From positions 1 through 64,000 of IMG/VR virus record IMGVR_UViG_3300043446_004437: a stretch of DNA of 64,000 nucleotides; one strand, written 5' to 3'. Positions 51,899-58,351 of the stretch are shown here, in pieces. How positions within the stretch are numbered: position 1 is the stretch's first letter; the number at the start of each line of letters is the position of its first letter. The notes under the pieces were generated by a model that searched no databases, was not told the origin of the DNA, and saw nothing but the letters and a program-made list of their open reading frames with translations. The position numbers and the translations under genes were made by a program.

Positions 51899-52225
51899 AT
51901 GAAAGAAATGGAATGGTGTGGATGCATGGATGCGCGTTCATGGAAAGATGGCTTTGCTGACATCTTTAGCAGGGAGCTAGTAGAAGGTAAAAGAAAAGGT
52001 GAGTTGTATGAATTGTTTGAAGTGAAAAGCTTTGAAGAATTCAAGGATGAGTTAAGTGATATTGCATGGGGCATAGGACGTATTGTTGGTGGTTTGTTTG
52101 GTAAGCCATATGTACGGATTATTGGTGATGCAAAGCACTACAACAAGGTTGTTTCTCGTATAAATGAATATGGTTGTATGAGGAGCAAGCGATTCTTGGT
52201 TAACGGCGAATGTCCAAACAAGTGA
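51899..52225 (+). CDS. Hypothetical protein
   Basis: AAGGAG SD; 108 aa. Confidence 0.65.
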   Translation: MKEMEWCGCMDARSWKDGFADIFSRELVEGKRKGELYELFEVKSFEEFKDELSDIAWGIGRIVGGLFGKPYVRIIGDAKHYNKVVSRINEYGCMRSKRFLVNGECPNK

Positions 52226-52239
52226 TTAAGGAGAACAAC

Positions 52240-52671
52240 ATGAAAGAAAAAGCGATAATCGTTGACATTGATGGCACTTTATTTGAAGAGGCGCCAGGCT
52301 GGACAATGGAGACTGATGCATGGTGGGTGGAAGAAACACTTAAGATGCGTGAGTTGGAAGTTGGGATTGGATTAATTAAGGTATTTAAGGAGATGGGATT
52401 TAAGTTGGTTTTCTTGACAGCAAGAGGACAAAGCTGCAAGAAGAACACTTGGATCAGATTTAAGAAAGCAGGCATTCATAGCTTGGTGGACTCGATGTGG
52501 CACAGGCCAATTAAGTGGAGCGAATTACCACCAGTTGAATACAAGAGGCTTATGATGCAACGGATTATGAAAAAGTATGATGTTGTATTTGCTATGGATG
52601 ATAGCGATAAGAACCTGGAAATGTTCAAGGGTTTGGGAATTAAAGTATTCGATGCAAAGAAATGGTGGTAA
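52240..52671 (+). CDS. HAD-family phosphatase (PNK phosphatase-like)
   Basis: IVDIDGTL, LTAR, K, AMDDS motifs I-IV. Confidence 0.85.
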   Translation: MKEKAIIVDIDGTLFEEAPGWTMETDAWWVEETLKMRELEVGIGLIKVFKEMGFKLVFLTARGQSCKKNTWIRFKKAGIHSLVDSMWHRPIKWSELPPVEYKRLMMQRIMKKYDVVFAMDDSDKNLEMFKGLGIKVFDAKKWW

Positions 52672-52673
52672 AC

Positions 52674-53078
52674 ATGAAAACGTTGGAACAAATCAAGCAA
52701 TACATTCTTAATACTGGTGTACTGTGGCACCTTACCACAGAGGCTAACAGTAGGCGGATAGTTAATGGTGGGATGGTGCTTACGCCTACCAACAACAGGG
52801 TTTATTTCTATGTAAATCCATCGGTGACACCATCAGACTATGATCTTTGCAGGTCGTATGTTAATGCAGATGGGGTGTATGTGTACATGCGTAACCTTGA
52901 TATGTGGCAGGTAGAGGTTACTCAAGAGATGCTTGACAACATGCATCTAGACATGGCGTTGAATGAGTTCCACCCAGGTGCAGCTGTCTACATTGAGGGT
53001 GTTGAAATCAAAGCTACCCTCCATACTCCTAGCGCACGAAAGATCGGTGTGCCATGTACTGAGTACCGCAACAAATAA
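52674..53078 (+). CDS. Hypothetical protein, possible ART/Tpt1-like fold
   Basis: LWHLTT..N..I..GG...VYF pattern. Confidence 0.45.
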   Translation: MKTLEQIKQYILNTGVLWHLTTEANSRRIVNGGMVLTPTNNRVYFYVNPSVTPSDYDLCRSYVNADGVYVYMRNLDMWQVEVTQEMLDNMHLDMALNEFHPGAAVYIEGVEIKATLHTPSARKIGVPCTEYRNK

Positions 53079-53139
53079 GGCGAAACCCTACCAAGGGTCA
53101 CTGTGGGATGACTGCCCACGGTCTGAAGAAGCCAAGTCA
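53079..53139 (+). ncRNA. Hammerhead ribozyme, type II with loop-I pseudoknot
   Basis: GGC-GAAA-stem III-GUC-stem I-CUGAAGA-A-GCC; TGACT/AGTCA pseudoknot. Confidence 0.8.
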
Positions 53140-53151
53140 AATTAAACAACA

Positions 53152-53539
53152 GTGCTACTGTTCTTTACTTGCTGTCCAGGTTGTTAAGTAAACAACAAAC
53201 AACAAGGAGAAAAACATGCACATATTGTCAGAAATCATCCTGGTGCTCTTCGCCGTATCGGTGATTGGCATCTTCGTTCTCACCATTGTTGGTGAGGTGG
53301 CATGGAGCTTGCTGGCTATTGCCGGCAAGATCAACAGGAAGTACGGTTCCTACGAAGCGGTGAAGGCTGCTGCGTTTGGGGTGGTGTACTACATGCTGCT
53401 GGCAAGTCAGAGTAACTCAACGTTTGTCGTGTGGTTTCTCACAATCTTCATGACATTGGGTTTTCTGAATCGTGTACGACAGAAGGCAGTAAGTAAGTAA
53501 GTAAGTAAAACCTGGACAGCAAGTAAAGGACAGTAGCAC
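53152..53539. repeat. 31-bp inverted repeats (53152-53182 and 53509-53539) enclosing one gene
   Basis: 30/31 complementary; the single difference is a G.U pair on the + transcript. Confidence 0.9.
53216..53500 (+). CDS. Small membrane protein
   Basis: 94 aa, about three hydrophobic helices, AAGGAG SD. Confidence 0.7.
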   Translation: MHILSEIILVLFAVSVIGIFVLTIVGEVAWSLLAIAGKINRKYGSYEAVKAAAFGVVYYMLLASQSNSTFVVWFLTIFMTLGFLNRVRQKAVSK

Positions 53540-53562
53540 ATAAACAAACAAAGGAGAAAGAA

Positions 53563-53808
53563 ATGTCAGCAAACCCTGAGCAGCAGGCTCGTGACGCCGT
53601 CATGAGCAAGTTGAAGATGATCAAGTCCTTGGACTTGACCCCAAATGAGTTGGAGTCCACCGAGCAGGAGGAGATCGAGTACCGTGCGATCTACGAGCTC
53701 GTGCTCAACGAGGGCATCGCACGTGGTTTCGAGCCTCGCGTGGTCTGCGCGATCCTTGGTCAGGCTCTCAACCTTGCTGCTGCAACCTGGTGGATCAGCC
53801 GGAAGTAG
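53563..53808 (+). CDS. Hypothetical protein
   Basis: AAAGGAG SD; 81 aa. Confidence 0.7.
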   Translation: MSANPEQQARDAVMSKLKMIKSLDLTPNELESTEQEEIEYRAIYELVLNEGIARGFEPRVVCAILGQALNLAAATWWISRK

Positions 53809-53822
53809 CTGATTGCAATAAA

Positions 53823-53887
53823 AGTAACCCCTGGGGACTTCGGTCCCTGGGGGTTTCTTTTTTATGACTAGGGAAAAGGTTTCTAGT
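53823..53887 (+). repeat. Cassette copy 5
   Basis: UUCG hairpin, T tract, ACTAGGGA-AAAGG-TTTCTAGT. Confidence 0.8.
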
Positions 53888-53914
53888 TTACAGTTAAACA
53901 AAGGAGAAAAACAA

Positions 53915-54217
53915 ATGATGAAACTAATTGAAGTTCGTCGTGACAACGAGGAGACGGAAATTCTTCTGCTCGATGTCATTTCAACCCATGACGAATGGGA
54001 AAAGATGAACGAAGAAGAACACAGGCGAGTCGATGAGTTGCTTGCTAACCAGCGAAACGACGAGTCCGGCATGCTCGTCGCTCGAGACCCAGATGATGGG
54101 TCTATGATCATCTTCCCCGAAGATACGGTTGTGGCAACACTTGACAAGTACAACTTTGCGACTGTCGTCTGGGCTGGCAAGTTTCCAAATTTTGTGTGCA
54201 GAATTTTGCGTAAGTAA
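53915..54217 (+). CDS. Acidic hypothetical protein
   Basis: AAAGGAG SD. Confidence 0.65.
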   Translation: MMKLIEVRRDNEETEILLLDVISTHDEWEKMNEEEHRRVDELLANQRNDESGMLVARDPDDGSMIIFPEDTVVATLDKYNFATVVWAGKFPNFVCRILRK

Positions 54218-54228
54218 TCGCAATCATC

Positions 54229-54296
54229 GTTGCAATGCAGTGAGATAGCATAAGAGTTGGTTCGTCCTGCTTGTGCTATCAACTCTGTTGTGCAAC
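54229..54296 (+). ncRNA. Structured RNA motif, copy 1 (long hairpin with 3x4 internal loop)
   Basis: GATAGCATAAG/CTTGTGCTATC helix; homologous to 54637-54709. Confidence 0.6.
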
Positions 54297-54325
54297 ATCA
54301 ACAGATAACAGAAACAGAGATAACA

Positions 54326-54625
54326 ATGGCATTGTACAAGACAATGAACAACAAAGAAAAGCGTCGTCACACAGCCGAGTTTGTTGGCAAACTTTGGAAT
54401 GAGTCAGACCGACTCGTATCCGAGGCTGGCAAAATCGTGCTTGGTTGCATTCATAGCGAAGTGCAACTTGCTGGCGACAAAGAGAATCCACGCAACATCA
54501 AGTTCGACCTCAATGACGAACTCCGTGATGTCGTCGAGGCTTTCCGCACGAACTACATACTCATCAGGCACTACTCGAAGGTTCTTGGCGAACTGGATGC
54601 GTTGGTTGCCGAGGAGCAGAAGTAA
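54326..54625 (+). CDS. Hypothetical protein
   Basis: 99-aa ORF between the two motif copies. Confidence 0.6.
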   Translation: MALYKTMNNKEKRRHTAEFVGKLWNESDRLVSEAGKIVLGCIHSEVQLAGDKENPRNIKFDLNDELRDVVEAFRTNYILIRHYSKVLGELDALVAEEQK

Positions 54626-54636
54626 CCGTAATCCGA

Positions 54637-54709
54637 TTCGTACTCGGTGAGAGCGCACAAGAGATTTCCACACTAGGTATCGCTTGTGCGTTCAACTCTG
54701 TGGTATGAA
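54637..54709 (+). ncRNA. Structured RNA motif, copy 2
   Basis: GAGCGCACAAG/CTTGTGCGTTC helix with compensatory changes. Confidence 0.6.
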
Positions 54710-54761
54710 CCATAGACACAAGTTTGCAAATGCAAACTCGTGAACAGACAAGGAGAAACAA

Positions 54762-54953
54762 ATGGCTAGGATCAAGTCGGCCACCACGATCAACCCCAAG
54801 CGGTTGCGCAGGCCCAAGCACAGGGAGCTCTTGCAGCTCTTGCCCATGATGGAGTCCCTCCACGCGATGAACGGGTATGGCATCCGTACTCCAGAGGACT
54901 ACCGCCACCACTGGCGCAAGCCAAAGAACTCAAAGCCCAAGCTCAAGAAGTAG
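54762..54953 (+). CDS. Small highly basic protein
   Basis: AAGGAG SD; K/R-rich. Confidence 0.65.
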   Translation: MARIKSATTINPKRLRRPKHRELLQLLPMMESLHAMNGYGIRTPEDYRHHWRKPKNSKPKLKK

Positions 54954-55031
54954 CTGTCGGCTTAAAATCGCAAACTACCCAAGGACAAAGTCCTCCTGCC
55001 ATTGAGCAGGTAAAAAGGAGGTGAATTAAAA

Positions 55032-55313
55032 ATGAGCGACAAGACCTACACTCTCAACGAAATCGTTGAGTCAGTCAGGAAGCACTACAACTTTCTGTTT
55101 TGGCAGACGAACGGCGAGCGAACGACTGCTTCAGCTTCTGAAGCACTCCTCGTACTTGCTGTTATCGCCGGCCTTGACGAGGCAGCACATGCCAAGTGGA
55201 CGGTTGCGGACATCACGCAGATTCTTGTGGACGGCAACGTCATGCCACAAGAGGAGGCGCAGAAGTTCGCCACCAGCTGCGTTGATGAGTACAACAACGT
55301 AACGTTGTACTAA
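55032..55313 (+). CDS. Hypothetical protein
   Basis: AAAGGAGGTG SD; 93 aa. Confidence 0.7.
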   Translation: MSDKTYTLNEIVESVRKHYNFLFWQTNGERTTASASEALLVLAVIAGLDEAAHAKWTVADITQILVDGNVMPQEEAQKFATSCVDEYNNVTLY

Positions 55314-55322
55314 GAAAAACAA

Positions 55323-55389
55323 AGAATAACCCCTGGGGACTTCGGTCCCTGGGGGTTTTCTTTTTTATGACTAGAGGAAGAGCCTCTAG
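55323..55389 (+). repeat. Cassette copy 6
   Basis: UUCG hairpin, T tract, CTAGAGG-AAGAG-CCTCTAG. Confidence 0.8.
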
Positions 55390-55445
55390 CAAACCAAGGG
55401 CTTTGCCCTCCTGCTTTATGGCAGGTTAAAGGAGGTGAACTGAAA

Positions 55446-55589
55446 ATGAAAGTCAACACCTACGCAAGCGAGCGTGGTTACGGCAACTTCTGCGATGCAT
55501 GCATCCAGAGGGAGTCCGAAAACCTCGTGCAGGTGGAGTTCGTCTGTGAGACGGACGCACCGTGCGCAGGCTGCTCCGAAAAGGAGTAG
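55446..55589 (+). CDS. 47-aa Cys-rich protein
   Basis: AAAGGAGGTG SD; CDAC and CAGC. Confidence 0.65.
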   Translation: MKVNTYASERGYGNFCDACIQRESENLVQVEFVCETDAPCAGCSEKE

Positions 55590-55663
55590 TTTGCGATTGC
55601 GAAGTATGGGCTAGTACCCCATCCAGAGCAGTAGTGACGCTTTGTTAAAAATAATCACTCGTT

Positions 55664-55730
55664 AAGATTCCCCTGGGGGCTTATGCCCCTGGGGGGTCTT
55701 TTTTTTATGACTAGTGGATAGGCCACTAGT
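55664..55730 (+). repeat. Cassette copy 7
   Basis: Hairpin, T tract, ACTAGTGG-ATAGG-CCACTAGT. Confidence 0.8.
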
Positions 55731-55755
55731 TTATGCTCAAACAAAGGAGAAAACA

Positions 55756-56028
55756 ATGAGCAAAGCAACAAAAATGTTCATTGCACTCATCGTAGCTTTG
55801 GTTACGCTGCTGTGCTTTGGACTGATCAAGCAAAACCCAACCTATTGTGATGTGAGTTCTGTGTTCACGTCACCAGGTGACACGCTGTGGGGTATCGCAA
55901 AAGAGTACTGCCACGGTAACAGCACAACCATCATGGTTGATGACATCTTCCAGCTCAACCCAGAGTTGAAGAAGCGTGATCTTCAGCCATCAGAAACAGT
56001 CAAGCTTCCAACTAAAGGAGACAAATAA
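55756..56028 (+). CDS. TM + LysM domain protein
   Basis: PGDTLWGIA...IFQLNP...LQPSETVKLP after a hydrophobic helix. Confidence 0.8.
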   Translation: MSKATKMFIALIVALVTLLCFGLIKQNPTYCDVSSVFTSPGDTLWGIAKEYCHGNSTTIMVDDIFQLNPELKKRDLQPSETVKLPTKGDK

Positions 56029-56030
56029 CC

Positions 56031-57557
56031 ATGACAAACAAAACAACAAACAACACAGCTGCAGTGCCAAAAGACACACTGTACGCCAAGTTCAGGAGGG
56101 CTCTCTACAAGGCAGTAGAGAACCAAGTTAACTTCAAAGACATGCAGTTCGATGCAAATGGCAGGTGCTATTTGTCTTGTGCTATGAAGAATTGTGGTTA
56201 CGATCACTACACTCGTGGAATGATTGCAACCGCACAACGCAAAGCAAACGGTAAGGGATGGGTAATATTCTTTACCATTGCAATGCCAACAGCAGGTGAG
56301 GTTGAAGATGAGATGTTTGAGGGAGAACGTAACTCCTTCAAGCCACGCAAGGGCAACAAAGTGTTCATGCGTGATCTTCCAATCAGGCTCACAATCAACG
56401 AAACACCATCTGGAGTTAAGCTCCTGTGGTTCTTCAAGAACAAGCCACAATGGGGTATGAACGCATTATGGGCTACAAACGCACATCTGTATTCAATGGA
56501 ACCACTTGTCCAAGATCTATTTAAACAAATTGAACAGTGGTATTCTCCGGCAGACTTCATCCCAATTGCAAAGTACCTTCGCCATTCATCGGTAGAAAAC
56601 ATTTTCTACGGAGATATGTTGTATGGTTTCCCGGATAAATGGATAAACAACCTTTCTGGCGGGACAAATCCTCGGGATATCTTGAATAAGGCCTATGGAA
56701 AGTCTGGTCAGCATGGGCTTAGCAAGAACGCCTTTGGTGGAGTTGCAAACTTCACATCGTTGGAGCAGCTTGCAACAGCATACAAGCTGGTGTCATGTCT
56801 CAGGTCGTTTCCACCTCATTTCTTTGATCGGATTAAAATCACTGATACAGAGAACATGCGATTCCCAGGAGATCAGCCCAATGGTCTTCCAATGATTAAG
56901 TATTTCTTTAAATACTTTAATCACAAGAAAATCTTGGATGATGCTGTTAGATATATCAGTATAGCTGATAGAAGAGCTGATGGCGATTCTTTACTCATAC
57001 ACCCAGATGAACCAGAAGATATTCATTTTGACTGGGATTTCTTTGGAACTAGCTCAATGATGATCTACAGCAGAGACGCAGGAAGAATGCTTCACCAGAT
57101 AAGAGATCGTGCTGTGCGTAGAAACATTCTTGCTTTCAAAGGAAACATTCGTGAAACTCATGACTTAATTATGTCTGAGTTCAACAAGTTGAAGACTGAA
57201 GACAAGAAGATCAAATACAACAAGAAATATGCGGTATTGGATAATCAAATGGTGACAAATAACATTGTTTCCGTTCTTCCGAAATCAACACACGATCTTG
57301 TTTCGTGGGGTTCAGACCAGCACAACTGTATTGGCAGCTACGCGAACAAGGTAATGCAGCCTTCAAAGACAATCATTGTTGGATTTAAGAATCAAACAAC
57401 AAATGATTGGATTGGACACGCTGAATTGAGTCAAACAACAAATGGTTGGGTAGTTATCCAGCTCAGAGGAAAGTACAACCAAATTCTTGAAGACAACGAT
57501 AACAAGGTAATTCGCAAGTTCATCGACAATGTGTTCAAGACCTGGAAAAACGTTTAA
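56031..57557 (+). CDS. PcfJ-like domain protein
   Basis: LPKS..DL..WG..QHNCIGSY...QLRGKYN C-terminal motif. Confidence 0.75.
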   Translation: MTNKTTNNTAAVPKDTLYAKFRRALYKAVENQVNFKDMQFDANGRCYLSCAMKNCGYDHYTRGMIATAQRKANGKGWVIFFTIAMPTAGEVEDEMFEGERNSFKPRKGNKVFMRDLPIRLTINETPSGVKLLWFFKNKPQWGMNALWATNAHLYSMEPLVQDLFKQIEQWYSPADFIPIAKYLRHSSVENIFYGDMLYGFPDKWINNLSGGTNPRDILNKAYGKSGQHGLSKNAFGGVANFTSLEQLATAYKLVSCLRSFPPHFFDRIKITDTENMRFPGDQPNGLPMIKYFFKYFNHKKILDDAVRYISIADRRADGDSLLIHPDEPEDIHFDWDFFGTSSMMIYSRDAGRMLHQIRDRAVRRNILAFKGNIRETHDLIMSEFNKLKTEDKKIKYNKKYAVLDNQMVTNNIVSVLPKSTHDLVSWGSDQHNCIGSYANKVMQPSKTIIVGFKNQTTNDWIGHAELSQTTNGWVVIQLRGKYNQILEDNDNKVIRKFIDNVFKTWKNV

Positions 57558-57587
57558 CCAAAACAACAGCCTTAAGGAGGCAAAGCA

Positions 57588-58073
57588 ATGAATAGGTATC
57601 AGTTCACATTCTCCGATAACGGAGAAAAGATGATTGTTGAGGCAGACAACTTAGTCGACCTCACCCCAATCATTCAAGGATTCAACAACCAAAAGAGAGG
57701 CTGCACCATAAAGCGTGTATCCGATCCTCAGGTTGCTGAAGAAAACACAAACACAAACAAAGGAGAAAACATGAGCAAGATCCAAGAAACCTGCCCACGC
57801 TGCAAAGGCACGGGCAAGTACCAAGACAAGGAAGACAGCAAGTGCTTTAAGTGCAGTGGGAAGAAGGTTGTGTTTTACGACCCGATGAGCAAGGCACAAA
57901 TCGGCTTGATCAGGATACTGTTCAAGGAGGCACGGCCGGCAATGTCCGTTGACAAGCAGGAAAACCTGATCTCCATTATGGAGAAGCACATCAGCGGAAC
58001 CGAGCTCAAGTCCACCTTGTGGGCAAGCGCAGCAATCGACACTCTCAAGACGTACGCAGGAGGTACAAAATGA
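57588..58073 (+). CDS. Protein with a DnaJ-type Zn finger; internal start at 57771
   Basis: CPRCKGTG and CFKCSG; second AAAGGAG SD in frame. Confidence 0.65.
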   Translation: MNRYQFTFSDNGEKMIVEADNLVDLTPIIQGFNNQKRGCTIKRVSDPQVAEENTNTNKGENMSKIQETCPRCKGTGKYQDKEDSKCFKCSGKKVVFYDPMSKAQIGLIRILFKEARPAMSVDKQENLISIMEKHISGTELKSTLWASAAIDTLKTYAGGTK

Positions 58074-58351
58074 GAACATCACCAAGATGCGTTGGCACAA
58101 CACGTGCTGGCAAACAGTGTTTGAGGAGTGAAAACTGCCCCAAGCACAAAGAAGCCAATGCAAAAGCAAAGGCAAAATGGAATGCCATAGAGTCAAACAA
58201 GACCTTAAAGCATTTCATGCGCACAAACGGTGGGGCAGAGCTTCCATTGGAATACATACCCTTAACAAAGGCGCAAATCAGAAACCTGGTGAACCAGGGG
58301 CACATTGAGGCCTGTGGTCGCCCATACTTTACCGAGGAGGTAACGCAATGA
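58070..58351 (+). CDS. Small Zn-finger protein
   Basis: C..TT..G..C.....CPKH; AGGAGG SD. Confidence 0.65.
   Translation: MRTSPRCVGTTRAGKQCLRSENCPKHKEANAKAKAKWNAIESNKTLKHFMRTNGGAELPLEYIPLTKAQIRNLVNQGHIEACGRPYFTEEVTQ

What the first reader, a model, noticed from the sequence alone, without database searches (positions are those of the whole stretch)
53079..53139. Type II hammerhead ribozyme directly after a stop codon
Stem III CCCT/AGGG, GUC triplet (cleavage after 53099), 8-bp stem I, core CUGAAGA and GAAA, 3-bp stem II, and a 5-bp pseudoknot between loop I (TGACT) and 53135-53139 (AGTCA). Caveat: one extra A before stem II. It probably processes the early polycistronic RNA.
Basis: partly seen in the sequence, partly recalled or inferred. 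Interest (0 to 1): 0.7.

Follow-up and report, generated by a model that had tools for sequence, protein, structure and literature searches.

The report
Hammerhead ribozyme between two phage genes
The 61-base motif right after a gene's stop codon in this uncultured freshwater giant phage is a genuine, conserved type II hammerhead self-cleaving ribozyme that most likely cuts a multi-gene messenger RNA in two; it is a new example of a well-known class, not a new kind of element.

Summary
The motif has a complete hammerhead core, capped stems I and III, an open 3-bp stem II (type II) and a 5-bp loop I/3'-tail pseudoknot. It starts at the base after the TAA of ORF 52662-53078.

It falls below Rfam's cut-off (29.5 vs 37 bits) but is not chance:
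- E is 5e-5 over the 216-kb phage genome.
- No comparable motif appeared in 300 genome shuffles.
- A model built from 90 other viral type II hammerheads gives 47.4 bits, the only hit in the genome.

In orthologous loci the neighbouring gene is 68-95% identical in DNA, while the ribozyme is 90-100% identical. Changes occur only in loop III, the pair that closes it, and one compensatory pseudoknot pair.

The "extra A" is conserved in the orthologues. It matches the known A10 variant of a viroid hammerhead.

The ribozyme lies inside a five-gene, same-strand unit ending at a strong terminator. Cleavage after C53099 would therefore split a polycistronic mRNA. No RNA data exist for this locus, so cleavage and "early" timing remain inferred.

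Verdict: a new member of a known kind, of modest interest.

The parts
52662..53078 (+). Upstream gene (138 aa, function unknown). Its TAA stop (53076-78) abuts the ribozyme, and its last A (53078) is also family position 1 of the ribozyme.
   Evidence: The ORF was listed. Homologues at 65-96% aa identity exist. All five strain differences seen in 53045-53060 fall on third codon positions. Both models align position 1 to 53078.
53079..53081 (+). Stem II, 5' strand (GGC). It pairs with 53131-53133.
   Evidence: The middle pair covaries among relatives as G-C, C-G and U-A.
53082..53084 (+). Core G12 A13 A14.
   Evidence: Invariant in 90 relatives.
53085..53098 (+). Stem III hairpin: A15.1...U16.1, 5 bp, loop ACCA. 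It would be the 3'-terminal hairpin of the upstream cleavage product.
   Evidence: In orthologues the loop and the innermost pair vary while the outer 4 bp are kept.
53099..53099 (+). C17, the cleavage-site nucleotide. The predicted cut is between 53099 and 53100, leaving a 2',3'-cyclic phosphate on C53099 and a 5'-OH on A53100.
   Evidence: The position follows from the core alignment. The chemistry comes from established hammerhead knowledge (PMC8782182). It was not measured here.
53100..53122 (+). Stem I hairpin: 8 bp with a 7-nt loop at 53108-14. It would be the 5'-terminal hairpin of the downstream product.
   Evidence: The basal pairs covary among relatives.
53123..53129 (+). Core C3 U4 G5 A6 A7 G8 A9 (CUGAAGA).
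   Evidence: It fits the CUGANGA consensus, in which position 7 is variable.
53130..53130 (+). Extra A between A9 and G10.1 ('A10').
   Evidence: It is kept in all orthologous loci. It is absent in some close non-orthologous relatives.
53131..53133 (+). Stem II, 3' strand (GCC).
53135..53139 (+). 3' tail AGUCA, which forms a 5-bp pseudoknot with loop-I UGACU (53109-53113).
   Evidence: There are two compensatory pairs. U53113-A53135 becomes C-G in the orthologues. A53111-U53137 becomes G-C in the sub-family. All cells of the helix are paired.
53216..53500 (+). First downstream gene (94 aa, hydrophobic, likely a small membrane protein). It lies on the 3' cleavage product.
   Evidence: No promoter-like site lies between the ribozyme and this gene. 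Other strains carry a different gene here.
51852..51880 (+). The nearest upstream copy of the repeated cassette motif (TTATGACTAG plus a palindromic hairpin) that follows a terminator-like hairpin. It marks the probable start of the unit that contains the ribozyme.
   Evidence: Promoter function is not established.
53826..53855 (+). Strong intrinsic terminator (13-bp G+C-rich stem plus a T-run) that ends the unit containing the ribozyme.
52210..52671 (+). Stand-alone polynucleotide-kinase-type HAD phosphatase domain gene in the same unit. It is syntenic with the 138-aa gene and the ribozyme in orthologues.
   Evidence: PF25109 at 49 bits. Synteny is shown. A link to the ribozyme is speculative.

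Best explanation
Positions 53078-53139 (+) encode a functional type II hammerhead ribozyme in a five-gene, same-strand unit of an uncultured 216-kb freshwater phage.

How it works. Once the 61 nt are transcribed, stems I and III fold as hairpins. The 3-bp stem II closes the junction. The 3' tail pairs with loop I, and this pseudoknot holds stems I and II parallel. The RNA then cleaves itself after C53099, 21 nt past the stop codon of gene 52662-53078.

Shown here: the motif, its statistical significance, its conservation and covariation, and its position within the gene unit.

Inferred from established hammerhead chemistry: the cut itself, a 2',3'-cyclic phosphate on the upstream piece and a 5'-OH on the downstream piece.

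Inferred consequences:
- Only the 3-bp stem II joins the two products, so they separate at once and the cut is effectively irreversible.
- The upstream mRNA (three genes) ends in the stem III hairpin.
- The downstream mRNA (genes 53216-53500 and 53563-53808) begins with a 5'-OH directly on the 8-bp stem I hairpin. Such an end is a poor entry point for 5'-end-dependent RNases.
- The two halves of the operon would therefore decay, and be expressed, independently.
For: Anatomy and fold:
- The full core and all helices were read directly.
- The minimum-energy fold is the hammerhead junction.

Statistics:
- Rfam Hammerhead_II gives 29.5 bits, E 5.2e-5 over the genome.
- There were 0 descriptor hits in 300 genome shuffles.
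- A covariance model built from 90 other viral type II hammerheads scores the site at 47.4 bits, E 1.9e-9. It is the only hit in 216 kb.

Orthologous loci, found through the neighbouring protein and so independently of the RNA:
- The neighbouring gene is 68-95% identical in DNA, while the ribozyme is 90-100% identical.
- All differences lie in loop III, the pair that closes it, or a compensatory U-A to C-G pseudoknot pair.

Covariation and context:
- Ten relatives give 99.5% paired cells, 6 pairs with double changes, and 22-41% paired in slid controls.
- Four metagenome strains show third-codon-position changes up to 53060 and none in the ribozyme.
- The ribozyme is on the same strand as the flanking genes. 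No promoter-like site follows it, and a strong terminator sits at 53826.
- The stop-ribozyme-SD layout is typical of the family.

Literature:
- Type II hammerheads with this pseudoknot are common in phages and prophages. They are proposed to process long transcripts (PMC3088659).
- Three type II hammerheads near phage-like genes cleave in vivo in Desulfovibrio vulgaris (PMC8782182).
- An extra A10 only moderately slows a viroid hammerhead (PMC1636495, PMC3705267).
Against: - There is no transcript or cleavage data. No RNA run was listed for the locus.
- The Rfam score is below the family's gathering threshold.
- My own model was trained on sequences retrieved with patterns taken from this motif, so part of its score comes by construction.
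- In a 206-nt context the minimum-energy fold keeps stems I and III but replaces the 3-bp stem II with another pairing.
- The extra A and the 3-bp stem II could slow catalysis.
- Stem III is a short hairpin, so protection of the upstream 3' end may be weak.
- The promoter of the unit is not identified, so co-transcription of the flanking genes is inferred from the absence of signals.
Confidence: 0.8

Rival explanations
1. It is an active hammerhead, but cleavage is conditional rather than constitutive. The ribozyme begins at the base after the stop codon. A ribosome terminating on the upstream gene would therefore cover stem II's 5' strand, G12-A14 and half of stem III, and prevent folding. 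Alternatively, its products may feed another process, for example an end acted on by the neighbouring PNKP-type phosphatase.
For: - The abutment to the stop codon is a family trait. The ribozyme starts -4 to +5 nt from the upstream stop in 214 of 406 distinct hammerheads, against 5.7% of control positions. The peak is at distance 0.
- The conserved A before stem II is often the last base of the stop codon.
- The phosphatase gene, the 138-aa gene and the ribozyme stay together in orthologues even at 38-42% protein identity.
- Regulated cleavage by phage hammerheads has been proposed (PMC3088659).
Against: - Genome compaction explains the same layout. The next SD-led start codon is equally tight, 21-30 nt after stem II in 51% of cases.
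- The position just after a stop codon is simply the first place where a cut does not truncate the protein.
- The A before stem II is conserved even where it is not part of a stop codon.
- No RNA ligase (RtcB, Rnl2-type) was found in the genome to complete a repair pathway.
- Homologues of the window's unit genes, the phosphatase included, were not found at the other hammerhead loci, apart from one weak hit.
Confidence: 0.12
2. It is a hammerhead-shaped but catalytically dead or very slow relic. It would be retained as a structured intergenic spacer, for example as stabilising hairpins or a protein-binding site.
For: - There is an extra nucleotide in the core strand and only a 3-bp stem II.
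- The score is below the Rfam threshold.
- Some relatives carry clearly damaging core changes, such as CCGAUGA in L319.
- Some phage hammerhead variants are slow in vitro (PMC3088659).
Against: - All 13 consensus core positions (N7 is free) are invariant across orthologues, while neighbouring coding DNA diverged to 68% identity.
- The pseudoknot is kept by compensatory change, and it matters only for the active fold (PMC3088659).
- An extra A10 only moderately slows cleavage in the viroid precedent, and stem II of 1-2 bp is active (PMC1636495, PMC3088659).
- The natural frequencies of the inserted base (none > U > A >> C, G) mirror the measured activities (PMC3705267).
Confidence: 0.06
3. It is a chance resemblance in an intergenic spacer.
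For: The thermodynamic z-score of the 61-mer is only -1.57, and the Rfam score is below threshold.
Against: - There were zero descriptor hits in 300 genome shuffles.
- E is 5e-5 with Rfam and 1.9e-9 with the custom model.
- The motif is conserved, with compensatory changes, at orthologous positions.
Confidence: 0.01

Closest known systems
Type II hammerhead ribozymes of bacteria, prophages and metagenomes (Perreault et al. 2011, PMC3088659; Rfam RF02276)
   Same: - The same core and the same permutation: stems I and III capped, stem II open and very short.
- The same pseudoknot between loop I and the tail right after stem II.
- The same setting between same-strand phage genes.
   Different: - It scores 29.5 bits against the 37-bit gathering score. 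It has an extra A before stem II and a non-consensus tail (AAGUCA instead of AGCCA), which the Rfam model mis-aligns.
- It is a single copy in a 216-kb lytic-type jumbo phage genome, rather than one of a cluster in a prophage.
Plus-strand hammerhead of chrysanthemum chlorotic mottle viroid, with extra A10 (De la Pena & Flores 2001, as described in PMC1636495 and PMC3705267)
   Same: One extra A lies between the conserved A9 and G10.1. In the viroid this is tolerated, with a moderate loss of rate.
   Different: - The viroid ribozyme is not a type II hammerhead. It uses loop-loop contacts, not a pseudoknot.
- It processes a rolling-circle replication intermediate, not an mRNA.
- In the viroid the A10 has a second role in the genome fold.
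The three type II hammerheads near phage-like genes in Desulfovibrio vulgaris, captured by cyPhyRNA-seq (PMC8782182)
   Same: The same class and a phage-gene neighbourhood. These show that such motifs do cleave in vivo.
   Different: Those have direct end-mapping evidence. This one has none.
HHphage of haloviruses HF1/HF2, upstream of the first gene of an early polycistronic transcript (PMC3088659)
   Same: It is a hammerhead in a lytic virus gene block. The mapped transcript 5' end lies within 3 nt of the cleavage site.
   Different: - It is a structurally distinct variant that needs high salt or Mg2+, and it belongs to an archaeal virus.
- It lies before the first gene rather than between genes.
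Engineered ribozyme insulators between genes (e.g. RiboJ; from my own knowledge, not checked here)
   Same: The logic is the same. A self-cleaving ribozyme leaves a 5'-OH hairpin leader on the downstream cistron and uncouples it from upstream sequence.
   Different: Those are synthetic, derived from a satellite-RNA hammerhead of another topology.

Membership tests
Hammerhead ribozyme, type II (Rfam RF02276) | Conserved core nucleotides: C3 U4 G5 A6 N7 G8 A9, G12 A13 A14, the A15.1-U16.1 pair, and H17 (not G) at the cleavage site. | tested here: met
   All are present: CUGAAGA 53123-29, GAA 53082-84, A53085-U53098 and C53099. They are invariant in the orthologues.
Hammerhead ribozyme, type II (Rfam RF02276) | [quoted passage not shown] | tested here: met
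   Stem I has 8 bp and a 7-nt loop. Stem III has 5 bp and a 4-nt loop. Stem II has 3 bp formed by the two ends of the motif. Helices are supported by covariation.
Hammerhead ribozyme, type II (Rfam RF02276) | A pseudoknot of 4 or more bp between loop I and the nucleotides immediately 3' of stem II (PMC3088659). | tested here: met
   There are 5 Watson-Crick pairs, 53109-13 with 53135-39, starting 1 nt after stem II. Two of the five pairs show compensatory changes among relatives. Chance is about 0.9%.
Hammerhead ribozyme, type II (Rfam RF02276) | A score at or above the curated Rfam gathering threshold (37 bits). | tested here: not met
   The score is 29.5 bits. The model deletes its two stem-II positions and aligns this motif's A-GCC to its tail consensus.
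Hammerhead ribozyme, type II (Rfam RF02276) | Recognition by a family model built from independent members. | tested here: met
   Model R1 (90 viral type II hammerheads, own sequence excluded) gives 47.4 bits, E 1.9e-9, and is the sole hit in the genome. Caveat: the training set was retrieved with patterns derived from this motif.
Hammerhead ribozyme, type II (Rfam RF02276) | A strict consensus junction with no nucleotide between A9 and G10.1. | tested here: not met
   There is an extra A at 53130. This is a recurrent natural variant. Among viral type II hammerheads with a GGC/GCC stem II, at least 199 have no insert, at least 86 have U, 17 have A, 2 have C and 0 have G. It is known to be tolerated (PMC1636495, PMC3705267).
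Hammerhead ribozyme, type II (Rfam RF02276) | Evolutionary conservation of the structure at orthologous positions. | tested here: met
   The ribozyme is 90-100% identical where the adjacent gene is 68-95% identical. Changes occur only in loop III, the pair that closes it, and a compensatory pseudoknot pair.
Hammerhead ribozyme, type II (Rfam RF02276) | Site-specific self-cleavage yielding 2',3'-cyclic phosphate and 5'-OH ends. | not testable with these tools
Intercistronic phage hammerheads (context described in PMC3088659) | The ribozyme lies between same-strand phage genes, in the sense orientation. | tested here: met
   The flanking ORFs and the ribozyme are all on the + strand. The stop-ribozyme-SD layout is shared by about half of 406 family members.

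The most novel reading that the evidence does not exclude
The ribozyme may be a translation-gated switch.
- Across the viral type II family, the ribozyme's first conserved base is often the last base of the upstream stop codon.
- A terminating or queued ribosome would then physically prevent the ribozyme from folding.
- The operon would be cut only when translation of the upstream gene lapses.
- This would couple mRNA processing and the fate of the downstream cistron to the translational state of the upstream one.

A weaker variant concerns the conserved trio of PNKP-type phosphatase, 138-aa protein (possibly with an ADP-ribosyltransferase-like fold) and ribozyme. These could form a functional module acting on the RNA ends that the ribozyme creates.
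Probability: 0.1. Interest if true: 0.65.

Novelty: new member of a known kind. Interest (0 to 1): 0.3.

Why it matters
- **Annotation.** A default Rfam scan misses this ribozyme, so real type II hammerheads with an A or U inserted before stem II are probably under-counted in phage genomes.
- **A test case for function.** The biological role of phage hammerheads is still unproven. This is a clean single-copy example inside a short unit that ends at a strong terminator, with orthologues that vary only where theory allows. It would suit a test of whether cleavage sets the relative expression of upstream and downstream cistrons.
- **Family-level patterns.** Two patterns seen on the way could guide that work. 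Both come from a biased sample. The ribozyme abuts the upstream stop codon, and the frequencies of the inserted base mirror published cleavage rates.

Tried and rejected
- **DNA similarity to known phages.** Window 52600-53600 gave no match among 50,697 phage records.
- **RNA runs.** None was listed for the locus, so 5'-end mapping at 53100 could not be attempted. The DNA-run contigs served only to show strain variation.
- **Bacterial genomes.** The pattern for the stem-I apex gave 10 hits in genome contigs, none of them a hammerhead. This gave no clue to the host.
- **Other ribozymes.** No Rfam family other than tRNA reached its gathering score in the window or in genome 64-204 kb; the last 12 kb were searched only with the hammerhead models. 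There is no second hammerhead in the genome. A circular or excised RNA made by paired ribozymes is therefore rejected.
- **Gene association.** tblastn of the unit's proteins against the other hammerhead-bearing loci then held found only the near-identical strain L266 and one weak phosphatase hit.
- **RNA-repair pathway.** No RtcB or Rnl2-type ligase was found. The Rnl1 search was uninformative because its control also failed.
- **The 138-aa protein.** PHROGs, Pfam, PADLOC and a PDB profile search gave nothing. The AlphaFold model was poor (pLDDT 58.6), and its Foldseek search gave nothing at E <= 0.001. Only a weak ESM-Atlas lead to ADP-ribosyltransferase-like folds remains.
- **Sigma-70 promoter.** None was found between the ribozyme and the next gene, or in the repeated cassettes.
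- **Longer-context folding.** This did not recover the 3-bp stem II. It is uninformative, because the energy model ignores the pseudoknot and tertiary contacts.

Full report

- The TAA stop at 53076-78 ends ORF 52662-53078.
- Stem II is GGC 53079-81 paired with GCC 53131-33.
- GAA lies at 53082-84.
- Stem III is ACCCU paired with AGGGU (53085-89 with 53094-98), with loop ACCA.
- C17 is at 53099.
- Stem I has 8 bp (53100-07 with 53115-22, one G.U) and a 7-nt loop.
- The core is CUGAAGA at 53123-29, followed by one extra A at 53130.
- The tail AGUCA (53135-39) is the exact complement of UGACU in loop I (53109-13).

Stems I and III are capped and stem II is open, which is the type II permutation. 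The unconstrained minimum-energy fold of the 61-mer is this junction. Its z-score against shuffles is only -1.57.

**2. Is it more than chance?**

- A default Rfam scan of the window returns nothing.
- With permissive thresholds, Hammerhead_II (RF02276) matches 53078-53137 end to end at 29.5 bits, against a gathering score of 37. E is 3e-4 for 301 nt against all families and 5.2e-5 for that family over the whole genome.
- The window is the first 64 kb of a 216,024-bp IMG/VR virus record.
- A hand-written descriptor, looser than the motif, finds this one site in the genome. It finds none in 300 dinucleotide-preserving shuffles of the genome. An even looser version finds 27 in 300.
- The 5-bp loop/tail complement arises in 0.9% of random 14-mers from the window.

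Chance is excluded.

**3. Relatives elsewhere and the extra A**

Pattern scans of IMG/VR retrieved several hundred type II hammerheads with a GGC/GCC stem II. The patterns fixed only the core and stem II and placed no constraint on stems I and III. Most of the hits nevertheless have well-paired stems I and III and a loop I/tail complement.

Counts of distinct, well-paired sequences by the base between A9 and stem II are as follows:
- no insert: at least 199;
- U: at least 86;
- A: 17;
- C: 2;
- G: 0.

This ranking parallels published kinetics for the same position (A10) in the CChMVd (+) hammerhead. There, A causes a moderate slow-down, U is 3-4-fold faster, and C or G is strongly detrimental (PMC1636495, PMC3705267).

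A covariance model built from 90 diverse members, excluding this phage, scores the window site at 47.4 bits. E is 1.9e-9, and it is the only hit in 216 kb. One caveat applies. The training sequences were retrieved with patterns derived from this motif, so part of that score comes by construction. The Rfam result and the evidence in section 4 are independent of it.

**4. Orthologous conservation, the strongest evidence**

Homologues of the upstream 138-aa protein (65-96% identity) led to metagenome contigs chosen without reference to the RNA. In every one, TAA is followed at once by the ribozyme, with the extra A kept.

| Locus | Gene DNA identity | Ribozyme identity |
|---|---|---|
| L266 | 95.4% | 100% |
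| L344 | 79.5% | 95.1% |
| L342 | 68.2% | 90.2% |
| L337 | 68.5% | 90.2% |

All ribozyme differences lie in loop III and the pair that closes it, or in one compensatory pseudoknot pair (U53113-A53135 becomes C-G).

A wider sub-family shares the stem-I apex. In it, loop AUGGCUG always goes with tail AAGCC(A/G), and loop AUGACUG always goes with AAGUCA.

Counted formally on ten sequences:
- 99.5% of cells are paired;
- six pairs show double changes;
- two of the five pseudoknot pairs are compensatory;
- slid controls give only 22-41% pairing.

Strain-level contigs from four metagenomes differ from the window at third codon positions up to 53060. They show no difference inside the ribozyme.

**5. 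Context**

*The phage.* The first 47 kb of the window (- strand) is a structural module with a portal and tail fibres. The portal is about 34% identical to those of Bacillus phage 0305phi8-36 and Moorella phage MTATph1.

*The small-gene region.* From 47.6 kb the genes run on the + strand. They start with a UvsX-like recombinase and continue into a region of small genes.

*The cassettes.* Between 50.5 and 55.7 kb there are seven copies of a cassette. Each consists of a G+C-rich terminator, a T-run, TTATGACTAG, a covarying palindromic hairpin and an SD sequence. All copies are on the + strand, and there are none elsewhere in the genome.

*The unit.* The ribozyme sits in the unit that runs from the cassette at 51852 to the terminator at 53826-55. 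The unit's genes are:
- 51899-52225;
- 52210-52671, a stand-alone PNKP-type HAD phosphatase domain (PF25109, 49 bits);
- 52662-53078;
- the ribozyme;
- 53216-53500, a small hydrophobic protein;
- 53563-53808.

No promoter-like site lies between the ribozyme and the next gene.

*A mosaic boundary.* In strain L266 the sequence is identical through 53151 and then continues with a different small gene. L266 lacks window 53152-54981. In more distant orthologues the downstream gene again differs, while the phosphatase, the 138-aa gene and the ribozyme stay together.

*The family layout.* Across 406 distinct family members:
- the ribozyme starts -4 to +5 nt from the upstream stop in 53% (control 5.7%), with a peak at distance 0;
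- an SD-led start codon follows 21-30 nt after stem II in 51% (control 2.5%).

The A before stem II is conserved whether or not it belongs to a stop codon. In this window the downstream spacer is longer, 82 nt from the end of stem II to the start codon. This fits a replaced downstream cassette.

**6. How it most likely works**

*Shown:* a conserved, covarying type II hammerhead lies in the sense orientation between co-oriented genes of one terminator-bounded unit.

*Inferred from established chemistry:* self-cleavage after C53099, giving a 2',3'-cyclic phosphate and a 5'-OH (PMC8782182).

*Inferred from anatomy:*
- The two products are held together only by the 3-bp stem II, so release is immediate and religation unlikely.
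- The upstream RNA keeps its stop codon plus 21 nt ending in the stem III hairpin. That is enough for normal termination.
- The downstream RNA starts with a 5'-OH directly on an 8-bp hairpin.

[quoted passage not shown] Nobody has yet proved this proposal, and I could not test it here because no RNA run was listed.

**7. Rivals**

- A conditional, ribosome-gated ribozyme, or one linked to the phosphatase, is not excluded. Genome compaction explains the same layout. No RNA ligase was found to complete a repair pathway.
- A dead relic is unlikely. The consensus core positions are invariant, and the pseudoknot is maintained by compensatory change.
- Chance is refuted.
- A circular-RNA or excision role is rejected, because the genome has only one hammerhead and no other ribozyme reached Rfam thresholds in the window or in 64-204 kb.

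**8. Comparison and verdict**

The motif works like, and by every sequence-level criterion except the curated Rfam score and the strict A9/G10.1 junction is, a type II hammerhead of the phage/prophage kind described in 2011. Catalysis itself is untested.

It is a new member of a known kind. It is notable mainly because default annotation misses it, and because its orthologues give an unusually clean picture of selection on the core, the extra A and the pseudoknot.

'Early' remains undetermined.

Noticed in passing
window 50486-55740 (+): copies at about 50486, 51177, 51477, 51826, 53826, 55328 and 55669: There are seven copies of a regulatory cassette. Each has a G+C-rich terminator hairpin, a T-run, TTATGACTAG, a 19-nt palindromic hairpin (CTAG-N11-CTAG, arms covarying) and an SD sequence. 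All are on the + strand, and there are none elsewhere in the 216-kb genome. From memory, they resemble the promoter-early stem-loop cassettes that mediate gene shuffling in T4-type phages. Promoter function is not shown.
   Followed up: partly
window 53152-54981, compared with L266:2682-3053: A strain variant (metagenome contig L266) is about 96% identical up to 12 nt past the ribozyme tail. It then lacks this 1.8-kb block of five small ORFs (four of them tested, none with a significant family match) and carries a different small gene instead. The ribozyme therefore marks a mosaic boundary.
   Followed up: partly
window 52210-52671 (+): This is a stand-alone PNKP-type HAD phosphatase domain (PF25109, 49 bits) with no kinase domain. 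It stays next to the 138-aa gene and the ribozyme in orthologues at 38-42% identity. No RtcB or Rnl2-type RNA ligase was found in the genome. Any link to the ribozyme's 2',3'-cyclic phosphate end is speculation.
   Followed up: partly
window 52662-53078 (+): The 138-aa protein has no Pfam, PHROG, PADLOC or PDB-sequence match. ESM-Atlas neighbours include ADP-ribosyltransferase-fold families (DarT/PARP, Tox-ART-HYD1, Arr-ms, DUF952, DUF3990) at TM about 0.5. H23, Y48/Y50 and E112 are invariant. The AlphaFold model was poor (pLDDT 58.6), and Foldseek found nothing. This is a lead only.
   Followed up: partly
Loci L004-L265 (IMG/VR contigs), e.g. L163, L175 and L052: Three family-level patterns were seen among viral type II hammerheads. 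The sample is biased to GGC/GCC stem II.
- The inserted base before stem II ranks none > U > A >> C, G, mirroring published A10 kinetics.
- The ribozyme abuts the upstream stop codon, and the next SD follows within 21-30 nt.
- Up to six ribozymes occur within 5-6 kb of one contig.

   Followed up: partly
L325:7004-7068 and L319 (- strand, around 1111-1128): Two close relatives have unusual cores.
- L325 has CUGAAUGA before GCC, with the extra base inside the core strand. The total length matches the window's CUGAAGA-A.
- L319 has CCGAUGA (U4 changed to C), which is probably crippled.

   Followed up: no
Genome 69-106 kb (L310:5076-5148, 14019-14105, 16838-16910, 17080-17152; L311:1-71, 1540-1611; L312:1772-1844): The phage carries seven tRNA genes outside the window. 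No other Rfam family reached threshold in 64-204 kb.
   Followed up: no
window 46000-64000: G+C content steps from 33-36% (46-50 kb, around the UvsX-like recombinase gene) to 43-52% from 50 kb onward, where the cassette-bounded small genes begin.
   Followed up: no
window 53078: The A just before stem II is conserved in the family (61-72% A even where it is not part of a stop codon, against a 19% background). In this phage it doubles as the last base of the TAA stop codon.
   Followed up: yes
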